Shown: piece after piece, positions 1 to 64,000 of the stretch | Numbering within the stretch: position 1 is the first letter of the stretch | Layout of the letters: every line of letters starts with the position of its first letter | Assembly (NCBI GenBank): GCA_965655095.1 | Contig: OZ296651.1 | Coordinates: 117,552,001 to 117,616,000 of the forward strand | Reading direction: 5' to 3' | Source: Haplodiscus bocki | Taxonomy: Eukaryota | Length of the DNA stretch: 64,000 nucleotides | The notes under the pieces: generated by a model | Told to the model about the DNA's origin: nothing | Databases searched by the model: none | Seen by the model: the letters and a program-made list of their open reading frames with translations, nothing else | Made by a program: the position numbers and the translations under genes

Positions 1-3000
1 CACCGGCTATTTTTTCATTCACAATAGGTTTCGTTTGCACTTTCACTTCATTCTCACCAGCAGAGGCTAATATCTTTGTGAACGCCCGACCTTCCACACC
101 GGCAGCATACTTTGCAACGTATCGTGAACACATTTCGTCGTCACAAATTTGGACGTTCGTACTGCTTTCGGTGAAAGCAAACAAAGCTGCATTTGTTGGT
201 GACGAGTGTTCATTGTAAGCAGCAGGGTAGTGATGTTTTCCAGCTCTCAGTTCTTCTTCAACTTTGTCCGTTGAAGAGTTAGGGTCAATATAGGACAATT
301 TCATGCTTCTCAGCAGGTCCCAAGTTTCTTTGGAGTAATTAGGTTGTATTTCCTTGTAAGAGAACCCAACTGATGCAGGATATTTAGGTACCCTACACAC
401 TGGCTTTCCCGACCAATCAGTTTTCTTTTTACATCTATTTTTTCCCTTGCCACAATCGTGCCGTTGGTATTTTTGGAAAAGTTTTCCCAACCGGAACCGT
501 TCTCTATCCGATAATGCTGGACAACATTTGCTCAAGGCGCCCATGAATGTTTCTTTCGAACAGCAGACTCGGGATTGAACTTCCGGACCAAACTTGTTTT
601 CTCCGGTACACACTAGTGCATGGATGTGTGGAAAGGCCGAAGTTTCATCTTGCCACTCGTATCTCATCCATAAGTGAGAGATTGGTCCCAAAGGTTGCTC
701 GGCCGAACACTTCAACCATTGCATTACATACAGTGAGGCGCGATGCCAACATCTAAGCATAGGCATTAATTCACTTTGTATTACAGATAGTCTCAGTTCT
801 TTCGAGTAATATCGGGCGGGTAAAGTTTGTCAATAGCCTGGAAAATTTTCCGCAAGCCAGGGTGAGTAGATTGCCCACATGTGTATGTAACAAAATAAGT
901 GGGGTTTTTATCTCTAATGAGTGCTGCTACTTCGCAGACATTTTTCCGGGATTCTGCACAATCGAACTTGAACGTTTCATCGGAAAAGTACTGCTAATTA
1001 GTAGGCGCACTGCCCAATTCTTGCCAGCCTCTGTTCAACACAATCCGAATATCAGTTTTACTCAATTGTAAGTTTAAAAGACAGTCAAAAACGAACTGAA
1101 GATATGATGCGTGACTGGAGGTTAAAAGCGACCCATCAGTGATGCGAGTTCGCAGCATGTTCTCTAAACCTGCAAACCCCACTTGTTTGTTGTATTTTTC
1201 GGATTGGAACAGGGATATTGGAGTTGCTCCTTCAATGCTGCCATCGTAATTTTGGGACCAGAAAATAGAAGGAAAAAGCAGTCCTTCCGGTTGAAGCAAA
1301 GGCGTTGATGATGTCGAGGAAGCTGTAATGTTTTCCATGAAACGTTTCTCCTTAACGGTTACGGTAATGGGATGAATTTTTTTCCTGTACAGTAAGTTGC
1401 ATCGAGAATTCAACAGTATGTGGAGAGGAATATTGTAATTTTCCTCACTGACAGCCTCTTGTACAGCAACAATGGCCCTTTCACCCGAACACACGTTCAA
1501 TTTATTCATCACCATAGTTGCTACGTCGGAAGTCCCTTGTTAAAGGAACATAATGTTTGTCACAAATGAAAACTCCTTGACCGGTTAAATTACTGAGATA
1601 GTGCCACTTTACAGTCGACACTTTCTTAGAGTTAGTTCCTCGGTAGATTAAAAAACTCCAGTAGCCTCGTAGAATTTTTTCTATTAAGGTCTCAGGTGAC
1701 TCCAACAAAGGTTCAGCAAACTTGTTAGCTTTCAGTGTACGCCAAAAAATGCAGAAGGGACCACCATGCCGAAGCAAAATTACAGCGTCTGTACCCCGAG
1801 AACCACAACCACATCCCACAAGCTCAAATTGGACATCAAACACGATGATATTGCGAGGTGGGTTGACCTTGTTCCTCAAACTGTTCACATCAGTTGTTGT
1901 AGCAATCACGTGTTTCGTATCCATGGTTACGTCGCGCACAATTTTCTCAGTCAATTCTATTCTTTGGCTCAAATGCAGATGGCATAAGTCAGCACATAAT
2001 GCATGCAACACCACGCCACCCGCCTGAAAAAAGTTTTAAATCATGTTTGGGTTGTCATTGTTAGTCGCCGCGTTGTTCAATATACTGTCAATGTCAGCTT
2101 GAGCTTGTGAAATACGCTGCAACTTGCTTTCTTTTCCAAACCCAGCAAATGTATTACGCAACAGTGACAACAAATTTGTTGCCAAAACGTGGTTAACGCC
2201 GGATACCATGGATGAACATAAAATTGGAGAAATGCAGCATGCTGCTTGAAGAAACCAGAGTGTATCTCCAGTATCATTGATCAGAGGAGGAGGTGAGCAA
2301 CCATGTTCATTGTTTGGTTGAGCCAAAGCGTAGCACTGAAGAAATTTCACATTACTCAAAAGTTCTTGTTCGTTTTTGTCCATCACTTTCGTCAATCGAA
2401 TGCAGGTGTCAAGATCTACGCCGACATGCTCCGGCATTTTTTCCTTTTTCGGCTGATATTGAGAGAGATCAGTGGCGACATCTTCAATCAACTTACCTTG
2501 AACAACCCATTGTCTAATTAAAATTGATATATCTGACCTGAAAAACATGGCGGTTTCTTCAACCTGGAACAAACGATTGCTAGCGATGTTCCAACGCCGT
2601 TTACGTCTCAACGAAACAGTACTCATACCACTATAAGACCCAACGCTCCGAAACAGTTGATAGATGTGGCTAGCATAATTAGCCTTTAAGCTACTCACAC
2701 ACGACAATGAAGGTGATACAATGGCTAATCGTTCCTCAAACAAAGTTGGAATTCGTCCCAGCTCCGGTTGCCTGGGGGATGCAAGAACTGTAACGCACAT
2801 CCCCTGTCATGCGCAGAACAAGTTTGCACAACCAAACCTTCTTTCTCATGTAACCGCAATGTGGCAGCCACTAGAAACGTCTTTAAGCACATCAAAGGGC
2901 GCAAAAAGTCGAGTCTAGCGCCTGAGTTTTTTGAATGCAGACGCTTGGAATGATGTGAAAGTTCTGTCTATTAAGTTTACAAAATGCTGCGCTGGTATGT

Positions 3001-4690
3001 AGCCAGGATCTTCGATAAACGTCCAACAACCGAAAGGGCAACGTATGTTTGGATACGGTTCCAAGTCCAAATCTTCAGCCATTTCTTTTTGTCTCATTGT
3101 TGTCATTAGTTGCTCGAAACGTTTCAGTCTCTGTGTTCCATCAACAGTACAAGTGCCAAAAATACGCCGCCGATTCAAAACACGCTGGATGCAGATAGAG
3201 AAAAGGGTAATTATCCCTAGCCAATGTTGCCTTATTTCCAGGGGTAACAGCGAGCAAAGAGCGACTAAACAAGCTTCTGGCTTGGAAGTATCAGAAAGGA
3301 GCGTGAAAAAAACAGCTGGCCAAGCCATTTGCCAGTTAACCTTTGGTGCAGTACAATAGTTATAACAGAAACAACACAGATGTACATTTTCGTTTTTCAG
3401 CTTTTTGCCGAACTTTCTATTAACCAATCCAACTTTGCTGTAGGCCTTAATGTCGAACGGATAATATACCGTGGCTTGACGCATGCACTTGCAACAAATG
3501 TTGGCAGCATCGACAGTATCTGTCACAACCAATTTTGACTCAGTTTTAACGGTTGATTCTTCAGTCAATTCCGATGATGGAACGAAATTTTCAGTTATTT
3601 TCAGTAAAATCTCATCAGCCAACTCGCCTCCAGGCAATCTGTGAAACTGATCTTGTCGATGTTCCACAGCAGTTGCAGGACGGCCTCTACTTCGCGTTGT
3701 AGTATTTTCTCCATCACAAAGAGCTTCTGCCAAACAAAAAGATGTCACAGCTGTATTAGTTTCTCTATCGTCGATCAAATATGTGGCGACTGGATATTCT
3801 GAAGACCGTCTGCGCTTCTGCAACGGCTCAGTTTCATCAAGTGCTGCAAGCGCTGTCTGGATTACGTGGCAGTGAGTATTCATTGCTGAATTTGCGCATT
3901 GACTACTCGAACCAGCAACATTTTCTGATAGGAGTGATGAAGTGTGGTATGTTTCGGTCAAGCCACTAATTACCTCAAAGTGATCTCCAGTTCGCGTTTG
4001 TTGAATGAAAACGCCTTGTCTGTCATTTGAGCAGTCGCATTTGTAAACGAACCAATTTTTCAAAAGACTGTGGTATAAATAAACGTCTAATTTAAAAAAT
4101 TGACAGAAGGTATATATTTCAACACAAGTGCCAAAAACTCCATTTTCTGCCATTCGCGATGTCTGCAGGTAGTGGTTGACAGTTGGACTGGTGAGAAGTT
4201 TGTTCTGGTTGGGGAACTCAGCGGAATAGATAGAAGTTTGCAAACTGTTTTCCGGAAAGGTTACCGAGTCCATGTTACTCACAATATGTTTCCTCAAATC
4301 ATGACCACTTTCATGAGAGAAACCGATAGCTACGCCCAGGGCAGTGAAAGGACAATTACCATCACCCGTTATTTTAAGACTCTGCGAGGGTTGAACAGAA
4401 GTGAGGCGAATGTTAGTTTTATTCACAATTATGCCGCTTGTTGGGGAACAGGATAGTCCCATCGCTTTCAACGTTGATTCTATGTGCAGGGTATCAACAG
4501 ACGAGACCAGCAAATTATTATCAGCTATACTGTACAAAATTCCTAATGGTTCGCTGGTTGAAGAAACGTTGTCAGTGGTATTTGGACAGGAGTGATTACG
4601 TTCACTGAAGCGTCCACATTTTGCACAGCGACGTCTTTTCAAATCACTCTTGCCAGATGGCATTGCTCTTTCACAACAAACTTCGCTCAA
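1..4690 (-). pseudogene. Disrupted OTU-Rep(HUH) polyprotein, N-terminal half
   Basis: ORF pieces 2915-4690 (KRRRCAKCG..H.C; GDGNCPFTAL; HFE), 2036-2800, 1502-2014 and 994-1515, plus YFVTYTCG and RYEWQDETSAFPHIHAL on the minus strand near 615-905. Multiple stops and frameshifts, and an internal deletion at 1514. Confidence 0.88.
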
Positions 4691-4861
4691 AAGTTTATCA
4701 ATAACTCATCTTTAATAGTGAATACAATGTAAAGAGTAGGCGCCATTATATAACCAACGTACAAAATGACATCGTTTTGCTCGGCTTTCAAACTGTTCAA
4801 TTAACGGTAGCATCTAATTAATTCGAAAAAAGTAGTATCCAGAAAAATATATGCAATGTGG

Positions 4862-4899
4862 GCCTTGGGTTTGCGCAGTTAACGGAGCAAAACCAAGGC
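4862..4899. promoter_or_regulatory. 12-14-12 inverted repeat upstream of polyprotein (one mismatch)
   Basis: GCCTTGGGTTTG-N14-CAAAACCAAGGC; same arms at 22664 and 60069. Function inferred only. Confidence 0.55.
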
Positions 4900-7800
4900 A
4901 TTCATCAGAGAATGAAAACAAACAGGTACTTACTTGGAGAGGCGGCGATGTAATGAGTGTTAATTGCGAATCTTGTGTTGTTTAAAAATCGTATTTAAGA
5001 AAATAATTTCCGTTCGCCCATACAAGTGGAACGCATCTCGATGTTACGGATTCCCGTAAATTAGTAGTGTACATGGCGAGTTCTGTCAAGTTTTTTTCCG
5101 CAATCCTCAGTAAAAGAGACTACAATGCACATCACAATGGTTCTTAGAAACCAACAATGTTCAGTTGGAAAAACCAACTGAGAACGCATAAGTGTTGAGC
5201 GAATTCATACGGACTTCGAAAGGTGTTTGGGAAAACTGTGCACTTTAGCAGGCCTGCAAGTTAACCTAAAAAGAGTAATCATGAAAAATGAGGAGGCAAG
5301 AAATGGAGAAAAAAAAGTTTTCCGAGATCTTACTATTAATTCAGGCAAACTAAAATTATGCCCTATTCTTTATGACTGAAGTCTGACACGAGGTGAAAAT
5401 TGACTCCACAGAAAAATATCTTCACGTAGAAAACCCGAAATCCTAACAAATTAGAGAACTATGTTTAAAAGATTCTTACCATCTTGTTTTTCTCTTAGTA
5501 AAATCTTGGCTTCCAAAATCATTGCATGATACGGAAGTTATGGAAGCTGAGAAAACCAGGTGATTCAGTTGAGAAAACAACTGCTTGGAGCAGTGGTTGA
5601 TCAATAAAAATTATATCAAAAATATCGACAGCGTTTATGTAAATGCTAAAAATGAAACATTCAAGTTGATTATTGTACAAAGCAGATGGGATTTTTGACA
5701 GTTGAAACAAGAAACAGCAAGAGGCCCTCTTTTTCCCCCGCGAAAAAACACGTTAACAATTTTACCTTGTCAAAGTTTCATTTGAACACCTGAAGAATGT
5801 AAACTTTCAGTATTTGCCGAAATTTATTGAAATTGTCGTCAAACAGAAGTCATTTTTTTATAAGTGCGTCACAAAGTTGATCCACAGTCCCATGCGTGGT
5901 ACTTCCACGCCACAGATAACACACAGTTTGCTATGAATGTTGAGGCAGTACTTTCCACCAAAAAGTATTTTCCACAAGCAAGGCTTTTCGCTAACATCTG
6001 CACAAAACGCGTCCGAATCCAAACAGTGTTGTCGGAAAAGGCAATTTTTTGCGGTCAAAACTATTGATAATATGATCTGAATTACGGTCATTCGATCTTG
6101 AATTTCGCTCCAAAAATGGTAAAAACGATTGAGTGGTTGATCACATGGAAGATGAAACGAAACTCACAGGCAACACAAATATGAAGATTTTTCAATAGCA
6201 TGAAAAACACGATGGAATGACGCACACACTGTCAAGTTTGTCAGAAACCTATAGGTAATGTAATTCTGCGAACATGCACGTTAACACTCCGTAGCTTTTA
6301 GGCGGTAGAAGGGTAAAAAATTAATGAAAACATTTTCTCCGTAGCAAAACCATTAGCTTGCTCAACTCTGAGGAGCCCGTTGACACTGTTCGTTCAATGC
6401 CAATCATCTTTGGAATCCATCGGTATAAATTTAAAGTTACGATTATGTTGTACACTTTTCAATTTTTCTTACGCCTCTCATGCTCCATCAGCCACATTAG
6501 CAATTCATGTAGGATGATAACAGCGGAGTTCCCCTTTGGAATTCGGAAATTGTGGAAGAATACCCAGTAGTCAGTCAACGATTCTTACAAATATTATCCA
6601 GCATTCTTCGTTCAGGAAAACGTCAGTTAAATAAATTACCCGAAACAATTAGCTCAATTTATCGACAGAAGCCACACGATGTTGACCATAGTCAGTTGAG
6701 ACTTCAGTGAGCCACGATTCACAAGAGGAAAACTTCAAACGATGGAATGACATGAGAAAAGTGTCTACTTCAGAGGGTTCAAATGAGGGATGGGAAATTG
6801 GCAAAGTCTAGTTGACGCTAAAGAAATTATGATTTCATATCAAAACGCTTTATACAAAAACTAACTTCGGCAATAGTTGAGAAGAATAACACTTTGCTAT
6901 ATTTCGCACGACCGCGGATAATTTTTTTGACAACGAGAAGCATTATTTCACAGAAAAATCAAAACTTACTTTGAAAAAAGTTCGAAACTCCCATATGTAG
7001 GCTTCAGAACCAACCAAATATATTCTTCCGAAAAACTCAGGTAAAAGAATTCGTGAAACGCGACAATTTTTGAACGGTCTGTAGAACAATAAAATCTTCA
7101 AAATCGGAAACACCCAAAAACGACATCAAGAGTAAATAAGCATCGTTTCAACTGTACACATTACCTCCACATATTGTTGAAGTTGCTTACACTAACCACA
7201 TTTCATGTTGGCAAAAGCTCAAAAAGTAGATAATCGAAGTACTGCTTTCAAGAGTTCATAAATGAAAGGCACATATTTAATCGACTATCAGTACTGATCC
7301 GCCATGAAGTTGGCCTTTATCTTGTCATAATTTATGGTTCAAGATTATTTGATGAAGCCAACTGTCTCAATTCAATGATGATTATGACTAGTAACTTTTC
7401 TCATCTTTTTGTTTTCCAAAAGCATCCAACGTTCTATATATGTATTTGGACGACGCATGAATAATATTGTTACATAGTGGATGAAATGTCATGGCGCAGA
7501 ACTTCCTATTCATAAATTTTCTAGTACAGAACACCTAACTGTACATTTTCATGTTTTGAAAAAATCAACTCATGTGAAATAGCACACAACACTTATATTG
7601 TTCCTCTGAAGCACAAAGGAAGGCAACGAGAACCACGAAGAATTGCTTCAAGTACATGACTCATTGCGCAACCAATAGATTTTTTTGAAAAAAGTGGATT
7701 AACTAAATGGAACGGAACTGTCCTGAAAACGTCCATTGTTATGGAAGCCGGTAACGGGTAGGTCTCCGGAGATATATTTCAATTCAGCAGCTGATAAAGT

Positions 7801-8123
7801 GGAAAATTTGTTACTTTACCGTTCTGAGCTGACTTCCGGAAAAAATCGACCGGAAAGTACGTTTGCCATACTTCATTGCTGCTGTATGAACTTAAAAAAA
7901 CCAGGAAGATTACTATAGGTTTTGAGGAACATCCTCACATTTACGGTGTGAGACGACCTTTGTACGTATCAGTTGCATCCGCATTGTGCGAGTTAATCTT
8001 CAGTCTGGAGAAAAGTATCGTAAAAAAAGAACAAACAACAGTTTCCAATTATTTAAACAAAAAATTAGATTCCGAACCAATCACCAGAATTGATACCGGA
8101 AAAAAATGAATGCAAAAAAAACC

Positions 8124-8165
8124 CGCCCTCTAGTAAATTGCACCGTTGCCTCCACTGGGGGGTCA
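8124..8165 (+). repeat. Junction motif J1 (A|B), core CCTCCACTGGG 8149-8159
   Basis: CGCCCTCTAGTAAATTGCACCGTTGCCTCCACTGGGGGGTCA; homology of A to D ends here. Confidence 0.9.
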
Positions 8166-8760
8166 TGGGATTGCGCCCGTCATTGGGCCTTTCCGAGGCG
8201 GGGGAGGGGCCCCTTTGCCGAGGTGTAATATATAGAGAAAGACCCTATGCAGACATGTGCTGCGTACACGCGATTTCAGCTCCTACCCATACGATTTGAT
8301 TCAAACTTTGCATGCAGGCACAGTTTACAATTCTAAGAACAATGGTGCAAGTTAGATCACTCTAGCAAAAATGATTGGGGAATTATGACGGGATGATTCT
8401 GTTTTTTGGCCCCTTTTGGCAGTTTTTTACCAACCGCCCTGCAAGTAACCACATGCATTTGGCCGAAACTTTTTGTGTAAAGCATAATAACTGTTGGCTG
8501 CACACATGCAAAAAATTTTCCACCAACTCGTCATAGGTGTGGAGATATGACGCATCAAATTTCGAAAAAAATGCCGAAAATCGATCATTTTGTCATAGCT
8601 CCCACATTGAACTACCTAGTTTGCGCTCTGGAGTGTCTCCAGTATGAAATTGACTCCATAACTTGAAAAATAATTTTTCGACGATAAAAAATTTTTGGCC
8701 ACTTTGCCGAAAAAAATGACGGTTATGACGAATTTTCCGAAAAAAAACATTTTTTACCAA
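8161..8760 (+). repeat. Terminal module of B: GC-rich hairpins plus three degenerate ~160-180-bp repeats
   Basis: CCATACGATTTGATTCAAACTTTGCATG; TATGAC anchors at 8384, 8546 and 8724; diverged homolog of the modules at 26199, 27251, 46494 and 63367. Confidence 0.75.
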
Positions 8761-22376: not shown

Positions 22377-22663
22377 ATTTCAAAAATTGTCATAAGGAGC
22401 CAGTGACAACTTAACAGAAGGTCATGATCATGTCATTCCATATCTATTTGAAAAAGAAACGAGTGGTTCAAACTGGCGCAACACGTTTTTTAAACAATTT
22501 ATTTCCCTAATACACAAGCGGGAAAATACCTGACAGAAAAAAATTCTCTATGAATACATTCATACTGCAACTCAACTTCAGTGAAGGGATTAAATCATCC
22601 GAGCAAACACCCAACAAAACTGAGAAAAAATAGCATATCGAACGAAATGCATAAATCCTTTCA

Positions 22664-22701
22664 GCCTTGGTTTTGTGAGGGCTACTGAGCAAAACCAAGG
22701 C
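22664..22701. promoter_or_regulatory. 12-14-12 perfect inverted repeat upstream of B polyprotein
   Basis: GCCTTGGTTTTG-N14-CAAAACCAAGGC. Confidence 0.55.
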
Positions 22702-29417: not shown

Positions 29418-29428
29418 CGAATTAAGAA

Positions 29429-32317: not shown

Positions 32318-32321
32318 GAAA

Positions 32322-45399: not shown

Positions 45400-45442
45400 G
45401 GCCTTTCTAGCGAACGGTAGCCTTTCCTCCACTGGGTGGTCA
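45400..45442 (+). repeat. Junction motif J5 (C|S3), core 45426-45436
   Basis: GGCCTTTCTAGCGAACGGTAGCCTTTCCTCCACTGGGTGGTCA; upstream part diverged, core invariant. Confidence 0.88.
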
Positions 45443-50903: not shown

Positions 50904-51702
50904 TTAGATCTGCAGAAAGTTGAAAACCAACGACGAGGGGCGACGACAAAAAACCGACAATTAAGGATTCCAACAGCATAGGTTCACAATGATGGAACAC
51001 ACGAAACAACTGCTATTAGCATTACATTGGAGTATAAAACGCAAGAGCTGAAAATAACTTTGTTCCAAGAGCTCTAATTAGATACTTGCTCATTTGAGTG
51101 TGTCTGCTTTTTGGTAAAGAACCAACGCTTTACCAAGTGTTTCACCTTGCGGTCGAAACAGGAAGAAGTACAGGGTTTTTATCTTACACTGTCTGGGTGT
51201 ATTTCGTTATTAGGACATACAAAAAAGAAAGTTTTCGATAATATACGCTAAAAATGCAGTGCAAAATGTTAAATTTTCTAATCAATCAACTTTACATACA
51301 GTGGGCAATCAGGAACGTTCAATGTTGAGGGGCAGTTTATGAAAACCTAATGTACCTATTTTAACGTTCCAAAAACCATGTTAAAATTGCAGCAAATTCT
51401 TTTCCGCAAATGAACAATGCCCAGAAAGTTTTGTATTAAACTTACTTAAACGTTGAACCGAAAGGAAAAGAGTACGTTGGCTAAATACTGTGCAGACTAC
51501 TCTCAAAGACATCACAAATCGAACAACTGAATTGTTGTAATTAGTAACAGAAAAAACATTTAGAAACAACCATTTCAGCGTTCTTTAAATACAGCAAAAA
51601 GCAAAAACACACATACGAAGAACTTTATATGTGCACCTCTGGAAACCACCGGACAAATTGAAGATATACGTTGGACGTTCAAGAATTCACTTCATGTGTT
51701 GA

Positions 51703-54700: not shown

Positions 54701-57700
54701 GCAGTTTTTTTTCTATGATTATTCCTGATCTGAACTCTTTGGGAACTGTTGGTACATGAATGAAATCTACGTTTGTGCAAACGTACAGCAACTGCAAAGC
54801 CCACCACAAGCGTTCAGTTATGCTAACAACTCTTCCCGTTACAGATTTGCAATTATCATCATCCTGACGTTTTTTGGTAACGCTGGTTTGGACACCTGCT
54901 ATTTTTTCGTTCACAAAAGGTTCTGTTTGGACTTTCACTTCATTCTCACCAGCAGAGGCTAATATCTTTGTGAACGCCCGACCTTCCACACCGGCAGCAT
55001 ACTTTGCAACGTATAGTGAACACATTTCGTCGTCACAAATTTGTACGTTCGTACTGCTTTCCGTGAAAGCAAACAACGCAGCATTTGTTGGTGACATGTG
55101 TTCATTGTAAGCAGCAGGGTAGTGATGCTTTCCAGCTTTAAGGTCTTCTTCAAATTTGTCTGTTGAAGAGTTAGGGTCAATATAGGACAATTTCATGCTT
55201 CTCAACAAGTCCCAAGTTTCTTTCGAGTAAGTTGTATTTCCTTAAAAGAGAACCCAACTGATGCAGGGTATTAGGGTACCCTACACACTGGCTTTCCTAA
55301 CCAATCAGTTTTCTTCTTACATCTATTTTTTCCCCTGCCACAATCGTGCCGTTGGTATTTTTGGAAAAGTTTTCCCAACCGGAACAGTTCGCTATCCGAT
55401 AACGCTGGACAACATTTGCTCAAGGTGCCCATGAGTGTTTCTTTTGAACAGCAGACTCGGGATTGAACTTCTGGACCAAACTTGTTTTCTCCGGTACACA
55501 CTAGTGCATGGATGCGTGGAAAGGCCAAAGTTTCATCTTGCCACTCGTATCTCATACATAAGTGAGAGATTGGTCCCAAAGGTTGCTCGGTCGAACATTT
55601 CAACCATTGCATTACATACTGTGAGGCGCGAAGCCAACATCTAAGCATAGGCATTATTTCACCTTGTATTACAGATAATCTCAGTTCCTTGGATGTCATA
55701 TCGCGCGGGTAAACTTTGTCAATAGCCTGAAAAGTTTTCCGCAATCCAGGGTGAGTAGATTGCCCACATGTGTATGTAACAAAATAAGTGGGGTTTTTAT
55801 CCCTAATGAGTGCTGCTACTTCGCAGACATTTTTCCAGGATTCTGCCCAATCGAACCTGAAAGTTTCATCGGAAAAGCACCGGTAATTAGTACGCGTAAT
55901 GCCCAATTCTTGCCAGCCTCTCTTCAACAAAGTTTAAAAGACAGTCAAAAACGAACTGAAGGTATGATGTGTGACTGGAGGTTAAAAGCGACCCATCACT
56001 GATGCGAGTTCGCAGCATGTTCTCTAAACCTGCAAAACCCACTTGTTTGTTGTGTCTCTCGGATTGGAACAGGGATATTGGAATTGCTCCTTCAATGCTG
56101 CCATCGTAACTTTGGGACCAGAAAACGGAAGGAAAAAGCAGCCCTTCCGGCTGAAGCAAAGGCGTTGATGATGTTGAGGAATCGTTCAAGTTTTCCATGA
56201 AACGTTTCTCCTTAACGGTTAGGGAAATGGGATGACTTTTTTTCCTGTACAGTAAGTTGCATCGAGAATTCAACAGTATGTGGAGAGGAATATTGTAGTC
56301 TTCGTCTTTGAAAGCCTCTTGTACAGCGACAAGGGCCCCTTCACCCGACCACACGTTCAATTTTTTCATCGCCAATTCACTTTCGCTGATCGAATTTGCG
56401 TTCATGTTGTTGCACAAAAAAGAAGCTACCGATGAATTTGACTTTTGACTTGAACAGTTGATGGATAGATCTGGTTCAACAACGCTTTTGTCCTGCCCAC
56501 ATAAACTAGCTATGTTGGAAGTCAGTTCACACTGTGTAGCATTGATTGCAGCTTCAGCGTTCGGTTTTTTAGGTGTTAACTTTCGTTTTGCTGTAGGTCC
56601 AACTCAAACTCGTAAGTTCGGATGTTTCATTCCCTCCTCGAAGTGTTTCTTACACACACAACTGTTGCACCTTGAGTAGGCACATCTGAGGAATGATGAC
56701 CTTCCACATCGACAGAAGTAGTTGCTACGCCGAAAGTCCTTTGTTAACGGAACATCATGTTTGTCACAAATGAAAATTCCTTGACCGTTTAAATTACTGA
56801 GATAGTGCCACTTTACAGTCGACACCTTTTTAGAGTTAGCTCCTCGGTAGATTAAAAAAGTCCAGTAGTCTCGTAGAAATTTTTCTAGTAAGGTCTCAGG
56901 TGAGTCCAACAAAGGTTCAGCAAACTTGTTAGCTTTCAGTATATGCCAAAAATTGCAGAAGCGACCACTATGCCGAAGCAAAATTACAGCATCTGTACCC
57001 CGAGAACCACAACCACATCCCACAAGCTCAAAATGGACATCAAATAGGACGATATTGAGAGGTGGGTTGACCTTGTTCCTCAGATTGTTTACATCAGTTG
57101 TTGTAGCGATCACGTCTTTCGTATCCACGTTTACATCGCGCAGAAGTTTCTCTGTCAATTCTATTCTTTGGCTCAACTGAAGATGGCATAAGTCAGCACA
57201 TAATGCGCGCAACACCACGCCACCCGCCTGAAAAAAGTTTGAAATCATGTTTGGGTTGTCATTGTTAGTCGCCGCGTTATCCAATATACTGTCAATGTCA
57301 GCTTGAGCTTGTGAAAAACGGTGCAACTTGCTTTCTTTTCCAAACCCAGCAAATGTATGACGCAACAGTGAAAACAAATATGTTGCCAAAACGTGATTAA
57401 CGCCAGACACCATGACTGAACATAAAATTGGAGACATGCAGAATGCTGCTTGAAGAAACCAGAGTGTATCCCCAGTATCATTGTTCAGAGGAGGAGGTGA
57501 GCAGCCATGTTCATTGTTTGGTTGAGCCAAAGCGTAGCACTGAAGAAATTTCACATTACTCAAAAGTTCTTGTTCGTTTTTGTCCATCACTTTCGTCAAT
57601 CGAATGCAGGTGTCAAGATCAACGCCGACATGCTCAGGCATTTTTTCCTTTTTCGGCTGATATTGAGAGAGATCAGTGGCGACATCTTCAATCAATTTAC

Positions 57701-59912
57701 CTTGAACAACCCATTGTCTAATTAAAATTGGAATATCTGACCTGAAAAACAAGGCGGTTCCTTCAGCTTGGAACAAACGATTGCTAGTGATGTTCCAACG
57801 CCGTTTACGTCTCAACGAAACAGTACTCATACCACTATAAGACCCAACGCTCCGAAACAGTTGATAGGGGTGGTTAGCATAGTTAGCCCTTAAGGTACTC
57901 ACACACGACAATGAAGGTGATGCAATGGCTAACGGTTTCCTCAAACAAAGTTGGAACTCGTCCCAGCTCCGGGTGCCTGGGGGATGCAAGAACTGTAACG
58001 CACATCCCCTGTCATGCGCAGAACAAGTTTGAACAACCAAACCTTCTTTCTCATGTAACCGCACTGTGGCAGCCACTAGAAACGTGTTTAAGCACATTAA
58101 AGGGCGCAAAAAGTCGAGTCTAGCGCCTCTGAGTTTTTTGAATGCAGACGCTTGGAATGATCTGAAAGTTCTGTCTATCAAGTTTATAAAATGCTGCGCT
58201 GGTATGTACCCAGCATCTTCGATAAACGTCCAACAACCAAAAGGGCAACGTATGTCTGGATACGGTTCCAAGTCCAAAGCTTCAGCCATTTCTTTTTGTC
58301 TCATTGTTTTCATTAGTTGCTCGAAACGTTTCAATCTCTGTGCTCCATCAACAGTAAAGTTGCCAAGAATACGCGGCCGATTTAAAACACGCTGGATGCA
58401 GATAGGGAAAAGGGTAATTACCCCCAGCCAATGTTGCTGTTTTTCCAGGGGTAACAACGAGCAAATAGCGACTAAACAGGCTTCCGGCTTGGAAGTATCA
58501 GAAAGGAGCGTGAAAAAAACAGCTGGCCAAGCCATTTGCCAGTTCAACTTTGGTGCAGTACAATAGTTATAACAGACACAACATAGATCTATATTTTCGT
58601 TTTCCAGCTTCCTGCCGAACTTTCTTTTAACCAATCCAGCTTTGCTGCAGGTTTTAATGTCGAACCGAAAATATACCGTGGCTTGACGCATGCACTTGCC
58701 ACAAATGTTGGCACCATCGACAGTATCTGTCAAAACCAATTTTGACTCAATTTCAGCGGTTGATTATTCAGTCAATTTCCATGATGGTACAAAAATTTCA
58801 GTCAATTCCAGTAAAATCTCATCAGTCAACTCGCCTTCAGGCAATCTGTGGAATTGATGTTGTAGATGTTCCACAGCAGTTGGAGGACGGCCTCTATTTT
58901 GCGTTGTAGTATTTTCTGCACCACAAAGAGCTTCCGCCAAACAAAAAGATGTCACAGCTGTATTAGTTTCTCTATTGTCGATCGAGTATTTGGCCACTGG
59001 ATATTCTGAAGTCCGTCTGCGCTTCTGCAAGGCCTCAGTTTCATCAAGTGCTTCAAGCGCTATCTCGATTACGTGGCAGTGAGTATTCATTGCTGAATTT
59101 CCACCTTGACTACTGGAACCAGCAAAATCTTCTGATAGGGGTAATGAAGTGTGGTATGTTTCGGTCAAGTCACTAATTACTTCAAAGTGACTTCCAGTTC
59201 GCGTTTGTTGAATGAAAACTCCTTGTCTGTCGTTCGAGCAGTCCCATTTGTAAAAGAACCAATTTTTCAAAAAACTCTGGTATACATAAACGTCCTATTT
59301 AAAAAATTGACAAAAGGTATAAACTTCCACATAAGTGCCAAAAACTCCACTTTCTGCCATTCGCGATTTCTGCAGGTAGTGGTTGACAATTGGGCTGGTG
59401 AGAAGTTTGTTCTGGTTGGGGAACTCCGCGGAACAGTCTCAAGTTTGCGAACTGTTTTCCGGAAAAGTTGCCAGGTCCATGTTACTCACAAAATGTTTCC
59501 TCAAACCATGACCACTTTTATGAGATAAACCAACGGCCACGCCCAGTGCAGTGAAGAGACAATTACCATCACCCACTATGGAAAGAATCTGCGAGGGTTG
59601 GACAGAAATGAGGCGAATGTTGGTTTTATTCACAATCATGCCGCTTGTTAGGGAACAGGATAGTCCCATCGCTTCCAACGTTGATTCTAAGTGCAGGGTA
59701 TCAACAGAAGAGACTAGCAAATTACTAACATGTATACTGTACAAAATTCTTAATGGTTCGCTAGTTGAAGAAAACTTTTCAGTGTTATTCGGACACGAGT
59801 GATTACGTTCACTGAAGCATCCACATTTTGCACAGCGACGTCTTTTCAAATCACTCTTACCAGATGGCATTACTCTTTCACAAGAAGCTTCGCGCAAAAG
59901 TTTAACAACCAC
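51703..59912 (-). pseudogene. Disrupted OTU/Rep/PIF1/GIY-YIG polyprotein of D
   Basis: At least nine colinear ORF fragments: GDGNCLFTAL, RYEWQDETLAFPRIHAL (first HUH His lost), YVAKY, GAPGTGKT, GDFFQLPP, QLYVVMSRVR, CYLI..YIGST. Confidence 0.9.
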
Positions 59913-60068
59913 TCATCTTTAGTAGTGAATACATTGTAAGGAGTGGGCGCCATTATAGAATCAACGTACAAAATGACATCGTTTTGCTCGGCTTTCAAAC
60001 TGTTCAATTAACGGTAGCATCTAATTAATTCGAAAAAAGTAGTATCCAGAAAAATACATGCAATGTGG

Positions 60069-60106
60069 GCCTTGGTTTTGCGCAGTTAACGGAGCAAAAC
60101 CAAGGC
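60069..60106. promoter_or_regulatory. 12-14-12 perfect inverted repeat upstream of D polyprotein
   Basis: GCCTTGGTTTTG-N14-CAAAACCAAGGC. Confidence 0.55.
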
Positions 60107-63100
60107 ATTCATCAGAGAATGAAAACAAACAGGTACTTACTTGGAGAGGCGGCGATGTAATGAGTGTTAATTGCGAATCTTGTGTTGTTTAAAAATCGTA
60201 TTTAAGAAAATAATTTCCGTTCGCCCATACAAGTGGAACGCATCTCGATGTTACGGATTCCCGTAATTTAGTAGTGTACATGGCGAGTTCTGTCAAGTTT
60301 TTTTCCACAATCCTCAATAAAAGAGACTACAATGCACATCACAATGGTTCTTAGAAACCAACAATGTTCAGTTGGAAAAACCAACTGAGAACGCATAAGT
60401 GTTGAGCGAATTCATACGGATTTCGAAAGGTGTTTGGGAAAACTGTGCACTTTAGCAGGCCTGCAAGTTAACCTAAAAAGAGTAATCATGAAAAATGAGG
60501 AGGCAAGAAATGGAGAAAAAAAAGTTTTCCGAGATCTTACTATTAATTCAGGCAAACTGAAATTATGCTCTATTGTTTATGACTGAAGTCTGGCAGGAGG
60601 TAACAATTGACTCCACAAAAAACATCGTCAAGTAGAAAACCCGAAAACCTAACCAATTAGAGAACTATGTTTGAAAGATTCTCACAATCTTGTTTTTCTC
60701 TTGGGAAAATCTTGGCTTCCAAAATCATTGCATTATATGGAAATTATGGAAGCTGAGAAAACCAGGTGATTTAGTTGAGAAAACAATCGCTTGGAGCAGC
60801 TGTTGGTCAATAAAAATTCAATCAATAATATCAAAAGCGCCTATGTATATGCTAAAGATGAAAAAATCAAGTTGATTATTTTACAAAACAGACGGGATTT
60901 TTGAAAGTTTGAAACAAGAAACAGCAGGAGCCCGTCTTTTTTTCCCACGAAGAACCATGTTAACAATTTTACTTTGTCAAAGTTTCATTTGAACAACTAA
61001 AGAATGTAAAGACTCAGTATTTGTCGAAATTTATTGAAATTGTCGTCAAAGAGAAGTCGTTTTCTTATAAGTGCTTCCCAAAGATAGTCCACAGTCAGAT
61101 GCGTGGAGCTTCCACGCCAAAGATAACACACAGTTTGCCATGAATGTTGGGGCAGCACTTTTATCAATAATTGTTTTCCCCAAGCAAGGGTTTTTTGCTA
61201 ATATCTGCACAAAACGCGTCCGAATCCAAACACTGTCGTCCGAAAAGTTAATTTTTTGCGGTCAAAACTTTTGATAATATGATCTGAATTATGGTCATTC
61301 GGCCTTGATTTTCGTTCCAAAAACGGTAAAAACAATTGAATGGTTGACCACATGGAAAATGAAACGAAAATCACAGGCAACACAAACATGCAGAACGTTC
61401 AATACAAGCAAAAATACGCTGAAATGACGCACACACTGTCAAGTTTGTCAGAAACCTATAGGGAATGTAATTCTGCGAACTTGCACATTAACACTCTGTA
61501 GCTTTTAGGCGGTAGATGGTTAAAAAATAAATAAGAACAATTTCTCTTCCGTAGCAAAACCGTTAACATGCTCAACTTTGGGGAGCCCAACGACACTGTT
61601 CGTTTATTGCCAATCATCTTTGGAATCCATCGGTGTAAATTTAAAGTTACGATTATGCGTTCACATTCCAATTTTCCTTACGCCTCATGCTCCGTCAGTC
61701 ACATTAGCAATTCGTGTACGTTGATAACAGTGGAGTTCCTCTCTGCAATTCGGAAAATGTGGAAGAATACCTACTAGTCAGTCAACGATTCTCACAAACA
61801 TTATCCAGCATTTTTCGTCCAGGAAAATGTCAGTTAAATAAATTCCTCAAAACAATTAGGTCAAAGTGTCAACAGAATCCATACGATGTTGACCATAGTC
61901 AGTTGAGACACCAGTGAGTCACGATTCACAGGATGAAGAGTTGAAACGATCGAAAGTGTCTAGTTCAGAGGGTTCAAATGGGGGATGGGTATTTGCAATG
62001 TCGAGTTGACGCTAAAGAAATTATGATTTCATATCAACACGCTTTATCCAAAATCTAACTTCGGCAGTAGTTCAGAGGAATAACAGGTAGCCATATTTCA
62101 CCCGTCTGCGGATAGTTTTTTTTCGACAATGAGAAGCATTTTTCACATAAAATTCAAAACTTTTTTTGAAAAAGTTCAAAACTCCGATATGTAGGCTTCA
62201 GAACCAACCAAAATAATTCTTCCGAAAAACTCAGACAAAACAATTTGTGAAACGCGACAATTTTTGAACGGTCTGTAGAAGAGCAAAATTGTCCAAATCG
62301 GACACACTCAAAAACGACATGAAGATTAAAGAAGCATCGTTTTAAAAGTACACGTTACTTCCACAAATTGTTAAAGTTGCTTCCACTAACCACGTTTAAT
62401 GTTGACAAAAGCTCGAAATGTAGAGAATCGAAGTACTACTTTCACGACTTCATAAATGAAGGGCACAGATTTATTCGACTATGAGTACTGATTCGCCATC
62501 AAGTTGGCCTTCATCATGTCAATATTTACGGTTGACGATTATTTGATGAACACAACTGTCTCAATTCAATGATGATTATGACTAGTAACTATTTCTCATC
62601 TTTTTGTTCTCCAGAAGCATCAAACGTTCTATATACGTTTTGGACGACACATGAATGAAATTGTTACATAGAGGATGAAATGTTATGGCGCAGAACTTCT
62701 TATTCATAAATTTTTCAAGTACAGAACACCTAACTGTACTTTTTGATGTTTTGAATAAATCAACTGACGTGAAAGAGCACACAAAACCTATATCGTTCCT
62801 CTGAAGCGCGGAGGACGGCAACGAGAACCACCAAAAAATGCTTCAAGTACATGACTCATAGCGCAATCCAAAGATTTGTTTACAAAAACTGGATTGAATA
62901 AAAGGAACGGAACTGTACTGAAAACGTTCGATGTTATGGAAGCCGGTAACGGGTAGTTCTGCGGAGTTATATTTTAATTCAGCAGCTCATAAAGTGGAGA
63001 ATTTGTTACTTTACCATTCTGAGCTGGCTTCGGGAAGATATCGTCCGGAAAGTACGTTTGCCATCCTTCATTGCTGCCGTCACGAACTTTAACAAAAAAA

Positions 63101-63329
63101 ACAGGGAAATTACTATAGGTTTTGAGGAACATCCCCACTTTTAGTGTGTGAGGCGAACTCTGTACGTATCAGTTGGATCCGCATTGTGCGAGTTAATCTC
63201 GAGCCTGTAGAAAAGTATCGTAAAAAAAGAACAAACAACAGTTTCCAATTATAATAACAGCAATTTAGAATTGCGGAATATTCATCAGAATTGATGCAGA
63301 AAAAAAAGAAAGTTGGATAGAAAAAGCCC

Positions 63330-63371
63330 CGCTCTCTAGTAATTTCCACCGTTGCCTCCACTGGGTGGTCA
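63330..63371 (+). repeat. Junction motif J7 (D|E), core 63355-63365
   Basis: CGCTCTCTAGTAATTTCCACCGTTGCCTCCACTGGGTGGTCA. Confidence 0.9.
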
Positions 63372-64000
63372 CGCTCTTAAGCCCCACAAAACCGTTTGCG
63401 AGGCGGGGGAGGGGCCCTGTGCCGAGCTTCATAAATCAAGTTTACACCTAACCGGACCCCCCCGAAAAGGAGACGATCTCGAAACCTAACCATACGATTT
63501 CGATCAAACTTTGCATGTGGATAGAGTCTGCCGATGTATGAAGATTTTTGGCACTTACATCATTTTCTTTTTTTTCGTTGGGGAGATATGACGCAATGAT
63601 CCTGTTTTTTGGCAGGTTTCGATGTATTTTTCGCAATATCTCCACACTTTAACCATAGCATTGGACTCAAATTTTTTCTGTGAAGCACAATTGTTGTGGA
63701 CTACCTACACGCCAAAAATTTTCGGCCAGGGCTTTTTGCCCTAGGAGATATGACCTTTCAAAGTTGTCAAAAATAGGCCAAAATCGACCAATTTGTCATT
63801 TCTCCCAAGTTGATGTTAAAAAGTGATGTGAGCCTTCGTCACAACGTGACGGGACTTGTGTCAAATGAAAGATAATTTTCCGACAAAAAAACAGTTTTGG
63901 TCAAATTGCCAAAAATAATGACGGCTATGACGATTTTTTGTGGAGGAAAAAAAACAGGTAAAAAGTCAGTTTCTCCTCTACTTCATCTGAAATCCGTCAA
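63355..64000. mobile_element. Unit E: start of another A/D-family element
   Basis: Terminal module followed by ATTTTTTGTGGA...GAAATCCGTCAA, matching D 47061-47126 rather than the mini-element tail. Confidence 0.75.

What the first reader, a model, noticed from the sequence alone, without database searches (positions are those of the whole stretch)
1..64000. Polarised head-to-tail array of unrelated Helitron-like families joined through one invariant 11-bp core
Seen: seven copies of CCTCCACTGGG, all on the + strand, each at a switch between units. Core-to-core lengths are 18038, 1052, 3175, 15012, 1056 and 16873 bp. Neighbouring units belong to families whose interiors do not align at DNA level, and no host DNA separates them. 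Established: canonical Helitrons insert dispersed at A|T and Helentrons at T|T. Inference: these elements use their own end/start junction as the target, building mixed-family arrays like a cassette locus. Plain rolling-circle overrun or unequal crossover would mainly give homo-tandems.
Basis: partly seen in the sequence, partly recalled or inferred. Interest (0 to 1): 0.92.

Follow-up and report, generated by a model that had tools for sequence, protein, structure and literature searches.

The report
Mixed head-to-tail array of Helitron-like transposons
The whole window is a one-directional chain of giant rolling-circle (Helitron-like) transposons and their short derivatives, from several related families, each joined to the next through the same 17-base sequence; nearly identical units sit between different neighbours elsewhere in the genome, so units are placed or exchanged exactly at that joint.

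Summary
CCTCCACTGGG occurs 7 times, all on the + strand (0.01 expected), and the invariant stretch is 17 nt long: CCTCCACTGGG[T/G]GGTCA. Each copy is the join between the 3' end of one unit and the 5' end of the next, with no foreign DNA between them.

The units are three autonomous families (A, B, C; 15-18 kb), ~1.05 kb non-autonomous units, and one deletion chimera. The families are related, not unrelated. Their ~2,700-aa proteins (weak OTU, HUH Rep, Pif1 helicase, GIY-YIG) are 41% identical and share their end sequences. The coding block is antisense to the joint strand in A and C, and sense in B.

Independent assemblies carry the same joints, and on one contig the array runs for more than 137 kb with one polarity. 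Family C units that are 99.5-99.65% identical from core to core lie between different neighbours in three loci. Conversely, A-unit tails that are 98.2% identical are followed by C in one locus and C' in another (~71% identical). Across 22 joints I counted 18 combinations of end types. All switch points fall inside the 17-mer.

This favours Rep-mediated, site- and orientation-specific placement at the elements' own end joint. No empty/filled pair, solo copy or circle was seen, so the target model is supported but not proven. I rate it a new variant of a known kind.

The parts
8149..8165 (+). Joint core 1 (G variant, CCTCCACTGGGGGGTCA): A-type 3' end joined to C-type 5' end
26187..26203 (+). Joint core 2: C-type 3' end joined to A-type 5' end (unit U2)
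27239..27255 (+). Joint core 3: S-type 3' end joined to B-type 5' end
30414..30430 (+). Joint core 4: S-type 3' end joined to B-type 5' end
45426..45442 (+). Joint core 5: B-type 3' end joined to A-type 5' end
46482..46498 (+). Joint core 6: S-type 3' end joined to A-type 5' end
63355..63371 (+). Joint core 7: A-type 3' end joined to A-type 5' end
1..8148 (+). U0: 3' part of a family A unit, cut by the window edge; 90% identical to U6; RepHel remnants lie on the - strand
8149..26186 (+). U1: family C autonomous unit, 18,038 bp. It is 99.5-99.65% identical to the copies in L010 and L011, which have other neighbours.
14327..22146 (-). U1 RepHel gene, antisense to the core strand. The main ORF is 14551-22146 (weak Helitron_like_N, HUH FPHLH, Y2 YAAKY, PIF1). 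A frameshift near 14740-14770 splits off the GIY-YIG domain (ORF 14327-14722).
26187..27238 (+). U2: short non-autonomous unit (S), 1,052 bp. Its first ~580 bp are the A-type 5' end (92%).
27239..30413 (+). U3: deletion chimera. 27239-29417 is the first 2.18 kb of a B unit (81% to U4). 29429-30413 is an S unit from position 68 onward (97% to U2); one core has been lost.
30414..45425 (+). U4: family B autonomous unit, 15,012 bp
32322..40342 (+). U4 RepHel gene, sense to the core strand. It is in two overlapping ORFs (32322-33926 with weak OTU; 33893-40342 with Helitron_like_N, PIF1 and GIY-YIG), broken near 33.9 kb.
41665..42261 (+). 198-aa ORF of family B with no family match; a 34%-identical copy is in L004
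43251..44243 (+). ORF2 (330 aa): conserved accessory gene downstream of RepHel, 44-53% identical across families, function unknown
45426..46481 (+). U5: short non-autonomous unit (S), 1,056 bp, 87% identical to U2
46482..63354 (+). U6: family A unit, 16,873 bp, decayed
51703..59912 (-). U6 RepHel remnants in at least 9 ORF fragments, antisense to the core strand
47843..48591 (-). U6 ORF2 remnant (broken)
63355..64000 (+). U7: start of a further unit with an A-type 5' end, cut by the window edge
26142..26195 (+). Example of the conserved 3'-end module (RTS): about 45 bp plus the left part of the core, probably ending in CTG(G)
26196..26765 (+). Example of the conserved 5'-end module (LTS): it starts G[T/G]GGTCA. 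The first ~250 bp are recognisable in all families, including the distant L003 and L005 families.

Best explanation
The window is part of a chromosomal, one-directional array more than 137 kb long. It is made of rolling-circle transposons from a distinct clade of Helitron-like elements. Their ~2,700-aa protein carries a weak OTU match, an HUH/Y2 Rep nuclease, a Pif1 helicase and a C-terminal GIY-YIG nuclease. The array holds three autonomous families (A, B, C) and their ~1 kb non-autonomous derivatives. Every unit runs from a 5' end (LTS, starting G[T/G]GGTCA) to a 3' end (RTS, ending ...CCTCCACTG(G), a CTRR-like end). The 17-mer is simply the RTS joined directly to the next LTS, the same joint a Helitron circle carries. 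Proposed mechanism (inferred): the Rep nuclease nicks the top strand inside this joint, between core positions 9 and 11. Because it recognises the same sequence in donor and target, a unit released from one joint is transferred into, or next to, another RTS/LTS joint. That regenerates two identical joints and keeps orientation fixed. Since all families in this genome keep the same 17-mer, any family can land at any joint, which produces polarised mixed-family arrays. What is shown: the anatomy, the protein domains, the precision and polarity of the joints, the recurrence in other loci and assemblies, and the unit-precise change of neighbours. What is inferred: the nick position, Rep as the agent, and the joint as the target.
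For: The core occurs 7 times on one strand against 0.01 expected, and 17 nt are invariant. Protein evidence: Helitron_like_N, PIF1 and GIY-YIG; HUH and YxxxY motifs conserved in 24 of 35 homologues; the best fold match of the Rep region is the Helraiser transposase 7lcc, E 8.8e-5; the helicase is Pif1-like and the GIY-YIG is SLX1-like. The same joints occur in ENA contig ctg85795 (99.83% identity), which carries 9 cores of one polarity over 49-186 kb. They also occur in a scaffold from another study (L002) and in a JGI contig (L009). The family C unit is present three times at 99.5-99.65% identity core to core. Its upstream neighbours are A, S and A, and its downstream neighbours are A-type, C''-type and B-type. 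The flanking A tails of the window and L011 are only 90.2% identical, while the A tails of the window and L012 are 98.2% identical yet are followed by C and C' (~71% identical). 22 joints give 9 RTS types, 8 LTS types and 18 combinations. The T/G difference at core position 12 goes with the C-type downstream unit (G at all four such joints, T at all other joints). Related families in another genome have joints CT[AG]G|GTGG[TG]C, some with hairpins ending 6 nt before CTAG, which is typical of a Helitron 3' end. Literature: the Helraiser transposase cleaves the RTS-LTS joint of circles precisely (PMC5876387), and a heterologous head-to-tail Helitron pair with a direct CTAG|TC joint is known from maize (PMC2267711).
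Against: I found no pair of otherwise identical arrays with and without a unit (empty versus filled joint). I found no solo insertion, no right-hand array edge and no circle sequence. The one left-hand edge (L010 25265...ACCTC|GGGGGTCA...) could be a 5-bp-deleted joint rather than a true host flank. The invariance of the core could reflect nick-site chemistry alone, as with the geminivirus nonanucleotide, rather than target choice. An A unit followed by a C-like unit recurs in 4 loci, so part of the unit order is inherited through segmental duplication. The 3' hairpin is convincing only in S-type ends; folds of the other joints are no better than shuffles and no covariation was seen. All RepHel genes in the window itself are broken. 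A 28%-identical relative (L023) looks like a solo insertion. The role of the GIY-YIG domain is unknown.
Confidence: 0.55

Rival explanations
1. There is no special targeting. Arrays grow by rolling-circle read-through and concatemer formation, and by segmental duplication. Heterologous neighbours arise from occasional ordinary insertions that happen to land at an element end, as proposed for the maize pair.
For: Helitron tandem arrays and head-to-tail joints are known from bats and plants (PMC5876387 introduction; PMC2267711). An A unit followed by a C-like unit recurs in four loci, and large blocks are shared between loci (for example L013 and L014 at 98.9%), which shows segmental duplication.
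Against: 18 end-type combinations among 22 joints, none with an intervening base, is far from what rare chance landings would give. Identical C units sit in three different contexts, all switching within 17 nt. Read-through gives homo-tandems or conserved unit pairs, not free re-assortment.
Confidence: 0.2
2. The array is a satellite-like locus shaped by homologous recombination. Unequal crossover and gene conversion between the conserved 5'-end regions of units shuffle and homogenise them.
For: The 5'-end module is 85-97% identical over ~600 bp among many units. U3 is a product of deletion or recombination within the array. A 1.4-2.2 kb satellite adjoins one array.
Against: Exchange points would scatter along the 250-600 bp of homology. 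Instead, the change from 98-99% identity to 71% or less occurs at the 17-mer on both sides of the units. The 3' ends of B share nothing with those of A or C apart from the core. C units (99.6%) are much younger than their A neighbours (90%).
Confidence: 0.1
3. The GIY-YIG domain, not Rep, gives the site specificity. It would act like a homing nuclease, cutting the 17-mer in resident arrays to open them for an incoming unit.
For: A GIY-YIG domain sits at the C-terminus in 27 of the 43 homologues found, the position where Helentrons carry an AP endonuclease (PMC4067079). The left half of the core (CCTCCA) is shared by families whose 3' ends are otherwise unrelated, a constraint beyond the CTRG|GTGG nick consensus seen in relatives.
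Against: The closest solved GIY-YIG domain is SLX1, a structure-specific rather than sequence-specific nuclease. Several family members lack the domain. There is no direct evidence for either nuclease.
Confidence: 0.15
4. The joints are assembly artefacts, made by collapsing or chaining repeats through a shared short sequence.
For: Repeats this long and similar are hard to assemble, and short-read scaffolds break at the cores (L002 ends within ~170 bp of two cores).
Against: The same joints in the same order appear at 99.83% identity in a separate long contig with ~72x coverage. Other joints appear in four further long contigs, a SPIRE-style scaffold and a JGI contig. Unit lengths reproduce to within 8 bp.
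Confidence: 0.02

Closest known systems
Canonical Helitrons (HLE1; e.g. Helraiser/HelibatN) and their tandem arrays
   Same: RepHel protein with an HUH/Y2 nuclease followed by a Pif1 helicase. Best fold match is Helraiser. No terminal inverted repeats. A CTRR-like 3' end (CTGG/CTAG). Precise RTS-to-LTS joints like those of Helitron circles and of the tandem copies reported in bats and plants (PMC5876387).
   Different: The 5' end is G[T/G]GGTCA, not TC. No A|T host dinucleotide is seen. The protein is about twice as long, with a GIY-YIG and a weak OTU domain. The Rep region is not found by sequence search against Helraiser. The arrays mix families, and the coding block is antisense in two of the three families.
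Two adjacent heterologous Helitrons in maize (Du et al. 2008, PMC2267711)
   Same: Two different Helitrons lie head-to-tail with the 3' CTAG joined directly to the 5' TC and no host base between, interpreted as consecutive insertions.
   Different: That is a single pair, regarded as a curiosity. Here there are at least 22 joints in 18 combinations, arrays longer than 137 kb, and a 17-nt invariant joint shared by all families.
Helentrons / Helitron2 (HLE2) and their HINE/DINE-1 derivatives (PMC4067079)
   Same: A RepHel with an extra C-terminal endonuclease and OTU-like sequence. Abundant short non-autonomous partners share the ends of the autonomous element. End sequences are shared between families that are less than 70% identical.
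   Different: The endonuclease is GIY-YIG, not AP endonuclease. No 12-15 bp subterminal inverted repeats. No T-runs or T|T insertion. The diagnostic residue before HxH is F or L, not S.
Paramecium chromosome-end Helitrons (PMC13085455)
   Same: Giant ORFs (9-10 kb). The orientation of the ORF relative to LTS/RTS differs between clades but is fixed within an element. Insertion is site-specific and orientation-specific. ORF-less derivatives and associated satellites are present.
   Different: Their target is the telomeric repeat and their RTS ends CCAA. Here no telomeric repeat is present and the sequence next to each end is another element's end. GIY-YIG is not reported there. The hosts differ in GC content and genetic code.
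Subtelomeric Helitron-derived tandem arrays in the cnidarian Hydractinia (PMC11934779)
   Same: Local amplification of Helitron derivatives into megabase-scale tandem arrays in an animal genome.
   Different: Those arrays consist of one non-coding derivative with a 372-bp internal repeat. They are not a mix of autonomous families joined by an invariant core.
HUH-enzyme site-specific integration at a copy of the element's own origin: AAV Rep at AAVS1, relaxase TrwC at oriT copies, IS608 target = left-end cleavage site (from memory, not tested here)
   Same: One nuclease recognises the same short sequence in donor and target, giving orientation-specific integration, with head-to-tail concatemers in the case of AAV. 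AAV Rep origin-binding domains are the next, weak, fold matches after Helraiser.
   Different: These are different element classes, and none builds multi-family arrays. This is an analogy of mechanism only, not membership.
Integron cassette arrays (from memory)
   Same: Ordered, one-directional arrays of unrelated modules, each bounded by a conserved recombination site, with insertion at a site formed by joined ends.
   Different: Integrons use a tyrosine recombinase encoded outside the cassettes and folded attC sites. Here each large unit encodes its own HUH enzyme. This is an analogy only.

Membership tests
Helitron-like elements (RepHel rolling-circle transposons, broad sense) | Rep nuclease with an HUH motif and two catalytic tyrosines (YxxxY) | tested here: met
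   FPHLHAI / FPHVHAL and YAAKY / YLSKY in U1 and U4. Both motifs are conserved in 24 of 35 homologues longer than 1,900 aa. Pfam Helitron_like_N scores 31.3 bits in U4 (cut-off 28.9) and 28.1 in U1.
Helitron-like elements (RepHel rolling-circle transposons, broad sense) | Pif1-family helicase fused C-terminal to Rep | tested here: met
   PF05970 PIF1, E 1e-10 to 1e-13; PDB Pif1 helicases and the Helraiser helicase region are matched.
Helitron-like elements (RepHel rolling-circle transposons, broad sense) | Rep region folds like a known Helitron transposase | tested here: met
   AF2 model of the Rep region (pLDDT 69, pTM 0.71). The top Foldseek hit is 7lcc, Helitron transposase bound to LTS, E 8.8e-5, probability 1.00, though TM-score is low (0.33). 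A sequence profile search against PDB found nothing.
Helitron-like elements (RepHel rolling-circle transposons, broad sense) | Discrete mobile unit with defined ends, no long terminal inverted repeats | tested here: met
   Three C copies are 99.5-99.65% identical from core to core with different flanks. No inverted repeats of 200 bp or more and no short LTS/RTS inverted match above chance.
Helitron-like elements (RepHel rolling-circle transposons, broad sense) | Absence of target-site duplication | not testable with these tools
   No insertion with host DNA on both sides was available.
Canonical Helitron (HLE1) | 5'-TC start and insertion between host A and T | tested here: not met
   All 22 joints read ...CTG(G)|G[T/G]GGTCA with no host A or T. 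A TC lies 4-5 nt inside the 5' end. The one edge seen has ...ACCTC before GGGGGTCA.
Canonical Helitron (HLE1) | 3' CTRR preceded at ~11 nt by a 16-20 nt palindrome | tested here: inconclusive
   CTGG (and CTAG in relatives) fits CTRR. A hairpin GGTGA-ATT-TCACC ends 10 nt before CTGG in S-type ends (z -2.4). A, B and C ends fold no better than shuffles and show no covariation. The related L005 family has 5-8 bp hairpins ending 6 nt before CTAG.
Helentron / Helitron2 (HLE2) | C-terminal apurinic/apyrimidinic endonuclease (Helentron) | tested here: not met
   The C-terminal nuclease is GIY-YIG (PF01541), with no AP endonuclease hit.
Helentron / Helitron2 (HLE2) | 12-15 bp subterminal/asymmetric terminal inverted repeats | tested here: not met
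   The longest LTS(60 nt)/RTS(100 nt) inverted match is 0-7 nt, reached by 95-500 of 500 shuffles.
Helentron / Helitron2 (HLE2) | Insertion within TT, with T-runs at the boundaries | tested here: not met
   No T-runs at any of the 22 joints.
Helentron / Helitron2 (HLE2) | Diagnostic G-S-P-H-x-H in Rep motif 2 (PMC4067079) | tested here: not met
   G-F-P-H-x-H or L-P-H-x-H in all members with a recognisable motif.
Paramecium-type chromosome-end Helitrons | Insertion into telomeric repeats, RTS ending CCAA | tested here: not met
   No telomere-like tandem repeat in the window. The RTS ends CTG(G).
Paramecium-type chromosome-end Helitrons | ORF orientation relative to LTS/RTS varies between clades | tested here: met
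   RepHel and ORF2 are antisense to the core strand in A, C and C', and sense in B and the L005 family. The B arrangement is old, because U3 and U4 share it at 81% identity.
Self-end (joint) targeting rolling-circle element (proposed behaviour) | Same unit found between different neighbours, with switch points confined to the joint | tested here: met
Self-end (joint) targeting rolling-circle element (proposed behaviour) | Empty versus filled joint in otherwise identical arrays; preference for joints over other sites genome-wide | not testable with these tools
   Only ±10 kb pieces of a few contigs could be fetched. The whole source genome is not searchable. The one scan of JGI metagenome contigs gave a single hit, and it is a joint.

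The most novel reading that the evidence does not exclude
These elements would be obligate 'joint-homing' rolling-circle transposons. The active site for both excision and integration would be the composite RTS|LTS sequence, which forms an imperfect hairpin (CCTCC-ACTG-GGTGG) only when two ends are joined. Chromosomal arrays and circles would then be the only competent donors and targets. Several protein families only 41% identical would share one landing pad by keeping the same 17-mer. That would make this a eukaryotic, transposon-built counterpart of a cassette array, and a natural site- and orientation-specific integration system for 15-18 kb of DNA.
Probability: 0.35. Interest if true: 0.85.

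Novelty: new variant of a known kind. Interest (0 to 1): 0.68.

Why it matters
Helitrons are thought to integrate almost anywhere that offers an AT or TT dinucleotide. How tandem Helitron arrays arise, and how they seed satellites and subtelomeric or centromeric repeats, is still an open question. This locus gives a clean natural case. Three autonomous families and their derivatives are joined by one invariant 17-nt sequence, with a recently active family (99.5% identical copies) whose neighbours change exactly at that sequence. That makes the idea that a Helitron-type Rep can use its own end joint as a specific target directly testable with oligonucleotides and plasmid assays. It also defines a large, unnamed clade of giant RepHel-GIY-YIG proteins: 327 clusters at E ≤ 1e-30. 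It adds a second example, after Paramecium, of coding blocks inverted relative to the transposon ends. If the targeting is confirmed, the system would be of interest as a sequence- and orientation-specific integrator of large DNA.

Tried and rejected
- **Host RNA gene as target.** I asked whether the core or 5'-end module is a host RNA gene that site-specific elements aim at. Rfam gave no hit. The single ARAGORN 'tRNA-Glu' at 29413-29506 lies on the U3 breakpoint and is not called in the other copies. Rejected.
- **Telomeric context.** No telomere-like tandem repeats were found.
- **Viral or episomal origin.** The six IMG/VR matches to the 17-mer share only the core and are chance hits. The arrays sit inside 200-900 kb contigs at ordinary coverage.
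- **Conserved hairpin across the joint.** Single-strand folds of six joints are mostly no better than shuffles. RNAalifold finds only the invariant mini-palindrome inside the core, with no covariation. Left as inconclusive.
- **Sequence link to Helraiser.** A Rep-domain profile search against PDB sequences found nothing. Only the fold search linked it to Helraiser.
- **ORF2 function.** No Pfam match, and the AF2 model was unusable at pLDDT 30.
- **Array edges.** Only one candidate left edge was found (L010/L013/L014), and it is ambiguous. No right edge was found.
- **L004.** This locus, from a related genome with a B-like gene, has two cores in the opposite sense downstream and no recognisable joint upstream. 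Its structure was not resolved.
- **Host identity.** Not established. The sample codes suggest, from memory only, coral-holobiont metagenomes. This is unverified.

Full report
**Observation.** CCTCCACTGGG occurs seven times, always on the + strand, at 8149, 26187, 27239, 30414, 45426, 46482 and 63355. Shuffled sequence gives 0.01 matches. The spacings are exactly those reported. No further copies appear even with three mismatches allowed. Aligning ±200 bp around the seven sites shows about 45 bp of moderately conserved sequence upstream and at least 200 bp downstream. Further upstream the sequences fall into distinct classes.

**Anatomy of the window.** All-against-all blastn of the core-to-core units gives the following.
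- U0 (1-8148, partial) and U6 (16,873 bp) are one family, A, at 90% identity.
- U1 (18,038 bp) is family C. It is 64-69% identical to A over about 3.6 kb of coding DNA.
- U4 (15,012 bp) is family B. Its only DNA match to the others is a short one in inverted orientation.
- U2 and U5 (1,052 and 1,056 bp) are short non-autonomous units (S). Their first ~580 bp are the A-type 5' end.
- U3 (3,175 bp) is not a true unit. It is the first 2.18 kb of a B unit fused to an S unit from position 68, a deletion that removed one core.
- U7 begins another unit with an A-type 5' end.

Every unit therefore starts with a homologous 5' module and ends with a 3' module. Nothing else lies between units.

**Coding capacity.** U1 carries a 2,531-codon ORF on the - strand and U4 a 2,149-codon ORF on the + strand. 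Both contain Helitron_like_N and PIF1. U4 also has a C-terminal GIY-YIG domain. In U1 a frameshift near 14.75 kb splits that domain off into ORF 14327-14722. The N-terminal part in U4 has a weak OTU match. The two proteins are 41% identical over 2,049 residues, so the families are related, not unrelated. The alignment shows an HUH motif (FPHLH / FPHVH) and a two-tyrosine motif (YAAKY / YLSKY). Both motifs are conserved in 24 of 35 long homologues.

An AlphaFold model of the Rep region (pLDDT 69) has the Helraiser transposase bound to its LTS (7lcc) as its only significant fold match, at E 8.8e-5. AAV Rep origin-binding domains follow as weak matches. A sequence profile did not reach any solved structure. 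The helicase is Pif1-like, and the nearest solved GIY-YIG domain is SLX1. A conserved 330-aa ORF2 of unknown function lies about 3 kb downstream of RepHel in all families.

The order RepHel then ORF2 is constant. However, the whole block is antisense to the core strand in A, C and C', and sense in B. It is also sense in the more distant L005 family. U3 and U4 share the B arrangement at 81% identity, so it is old and not an assembly error.

**Elsewhere.** Full-length homologues were found only in ENA and JGI metagenome assemblies, and none carries a database name. A profile of the Rep region finds 327 clusters at E ≤ 1e-30 among 1.84 billion representatives, most of them 2,000-3,000 aa long. 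This is therefore a large unnamed clade.
- Contig ctg85795 (185.8 kb) matches window 14774-32054 at 99.83% across three joints. It carries more A units with cores of the same polarity at 49-69 kb and 117-138 kb. The array therefore exceeds 137 kb.
- Four other long contigs of the same sample also carry arrays.
- A 17.3-kb scaffold from another study holds a C' unit with a core at each end and different neighbours.
- The single JGI hit to a joint pattern is an A|C''-type joint, 89% identical to the U0|U1 joint.
- In a second genome, more distant families (33-60% protein identity) also sit in small arrays with ~2 kb short units. Their joints read CT[AG]G|GTGG[TG]C, preceded by different sequence. 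Some have hairpins (perfect 8-bp stem in three of seven joints) ending 6 nt before CTAG, which is a typical Helitron 3' end.
- A junction HMM recognises the 5' module in all of these families.
- A 28%-identical relative in a GC-richer genome looks like a solo insertion between ordinary genes.

**Evidence that units move as modules with ends in the core.** The C unit occurs in the window, in L010 and in L011 at 18,038, 18,030 and 18,032 bp, and the copies are 99.5-99.65% identical from core to core. Upstream the three copies have an A-, an S- and an A-type 3' end. Downstream they have an A-type, a C''-type and a B-type 5' end. The downstream kilobases are essentially unalignable with each other. 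The A tails upstream of C in the window and in L011 are only 90.2% identical, so C is far younger than its neighbours. Conversely, the A tails of the window and of L012 are 98.2% identical over 4.6 kb up to the core, yet they are followed by C in one case and C' in the other, which are ~71% identical. Across 22 joints there are 9 types of 3' end, 8 types of 5' end and 18 combinations, with never an extra base.

**Where the ends meet.**
- Core position 12 is G at all four joints whose downstream unit has the C-type 5' end, and T at every other joint, so it goes with the downstream unit and belongs to the 5' end.
- B-type 3' ends differ from A and C right up to core position 1, so the left part of the core belongs to the 3' end.
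- The only candidate array edge shows unrelated DNA followed by GGGGGTCA, which is core positions 10-17.
- By analogy with CTRR, the 3' end would be CTGG, ending at position 10.

I place the joint between positions 9 and 11. The core is an imperfect palindrome (CCTCC-ACTG-GGTGG) that exists only when two ends are joined. Because it is invariant, covariation cannot test it.

**Mechanism.** The anatomy, polarity, precision and module-wise change of neighbours are shown. The mechanism is inferred. The HUH Rep would nick the top strand in the joint, as Helraiser does at the RTS-LTS joint of its circles (PMC5876387). Because the same sequence is recognised in the target, the released unit would be transferred into or beside another joint. 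Two identical joints would be regenerated and the orientation kept. Any family that retains the 17-mer can use the arrays of the others.

The rivals fare as follows.
- Read-through plus segmental duplication explains growth and the recurring A-then-C-like order. It does not explain the free re-assortment.
- Homologous recombination in the 250-600 bp 5' module would scatter breakpoints, which is not seen.
- A homing role for the GIY-YIG domain is possible and untested.
- Misassembly is excluded by the independent contigs.

**Comparison with known systems.** Helitron homo-tandems are known from bats and plants, and one heterologous head-to-tail pair is known from maize (PMC2267711). Helentrons carry a C-terminal AP endonuclease, subterminal inverted repeats and TT targets (PMC4067079); none of these is met here. 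GIY-YIG has been noted once, in a moss HLE2 family, as a captured domain (PMC11417382). Paramecium Helitrons share the giant ORF, the variable ORF orientation and site-specific insertion, but they aim at telomeric repeats (PMC13085455). Hydractinia has subtelomeric arrays of a single Helitron derivative (PMC11934779). I found no description of long, polarised, multi-family arrays joined by a shared invariant joint.

**Verdict.** This is a real and well-supported structure, and a new variant of a known kind.

**Limits.** Only ±10 kb pieces of a few contigs could be read. The host organism is not identified. All RepHel genes inside the window are broken, although intact 2,683-aa C copies exist in L010 and L011.

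Noticed in passing
window 43251-44243 (+); broken copy 47843-48591 (-); L002 14586-15596, L012 4023-5090 and 20835-21845: A conserved ~330-aa ORF2 lies about 3 kb downstream of RepHel in every family (44-53% identity, many invariant Cys). It has no Pfam match and the AlphaFold model is unusable (pLDDT 30). It is an accessory gene of unknown function.
   Followed up: partly
window 27239-30413: U3 is a deletion chimera: the first 2.18 kb of a B unit fused to an S unit from position 68 of its 5' end. The array therefore also decays by internal deletions that remove a core.
   Followed up: yes
window 29413-29506 (-): ARAGORN calls a 94-nt 'tRNA-Glu' exactly on the U3 breakpoint. The same 5'-end sequence in other units is not called, so this is probably a false positive.
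   Followed up: partly
window ~14740-14770 (-), ORF 14327-14722: A frameshift separates the GIY-YIG domain from the rest of the U1 RepHel. The same break is present in the independent contig (P0001, 2,334 aa). Intact 2,683-aa copies exist in L010 and L011.
   Followed up: yes
window 8149-8165 and the six other cores: The invariant core is an imperfect palindrome, CCTCC-ACTG-GGTGG, that straddles the join of two ends. It can form only in arrays or circles. It is invariant, so no covariation test is possible.
   Followed up: partly
L013/L014 8901-20264 (= L010 25265 onward): Beyond the only candidate array edge lie ~950 bp of unique DNA and then a satellite with 1.4-2.2 kb periods. The flank reads ...TTACCTC before the 5' end, resembling ...TTGCCTC of the 3' end, so this 'edge' may be a joint with a 5-bp deletion.
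   Followed up: partly
L005-L008 and L003 (sample ERZ25074608): More distant families in a second genome form small arrays with ~2 kb short units. Their joints carry a different conserved block containing a perfect 9-bp hairpin (GGGCATGCC-GA-GGCATGCCC) about 55 nt before CTAG|GTGG.
   Followed up: partly
L004 (sample ERZ25074608): A B-like RepHel has two cores in the opposite sense downstream. An ORF198 and ORF2 from a preceding unit lie upstream with no recognisable joint between them. The local structure is unresolved and may break the one-polarity rule.
   Followed up: partly
L023 (JGI Ga0535668_0000682), about 8-24 kb: A 28%-identical RepHel-GIY-YIG gene sits in a ~16 kb low-GC island between a Nipped-B-like gene and a tubulin/FtsZ-like gene in a GC-richer, gene-dense genome. 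It is apparently a solo insertion, so array formation may not be universal in the clade.
   Followed up: partly
protein searches: None of the 43 best full-length homologues has an NCBI or UniRef name, although the Rep-domain profile finds 327 clusters at E ≤ 1e-30. The clade seems absent from curated protein sets.
   Followed up: no
window 25894-26325 (-): A 143-codon ORF runs across joint core 2 on the opposite strand, and it is also called in L001. There is no family match and no conservation check was done. It is probably spurious.
   Followed up: no
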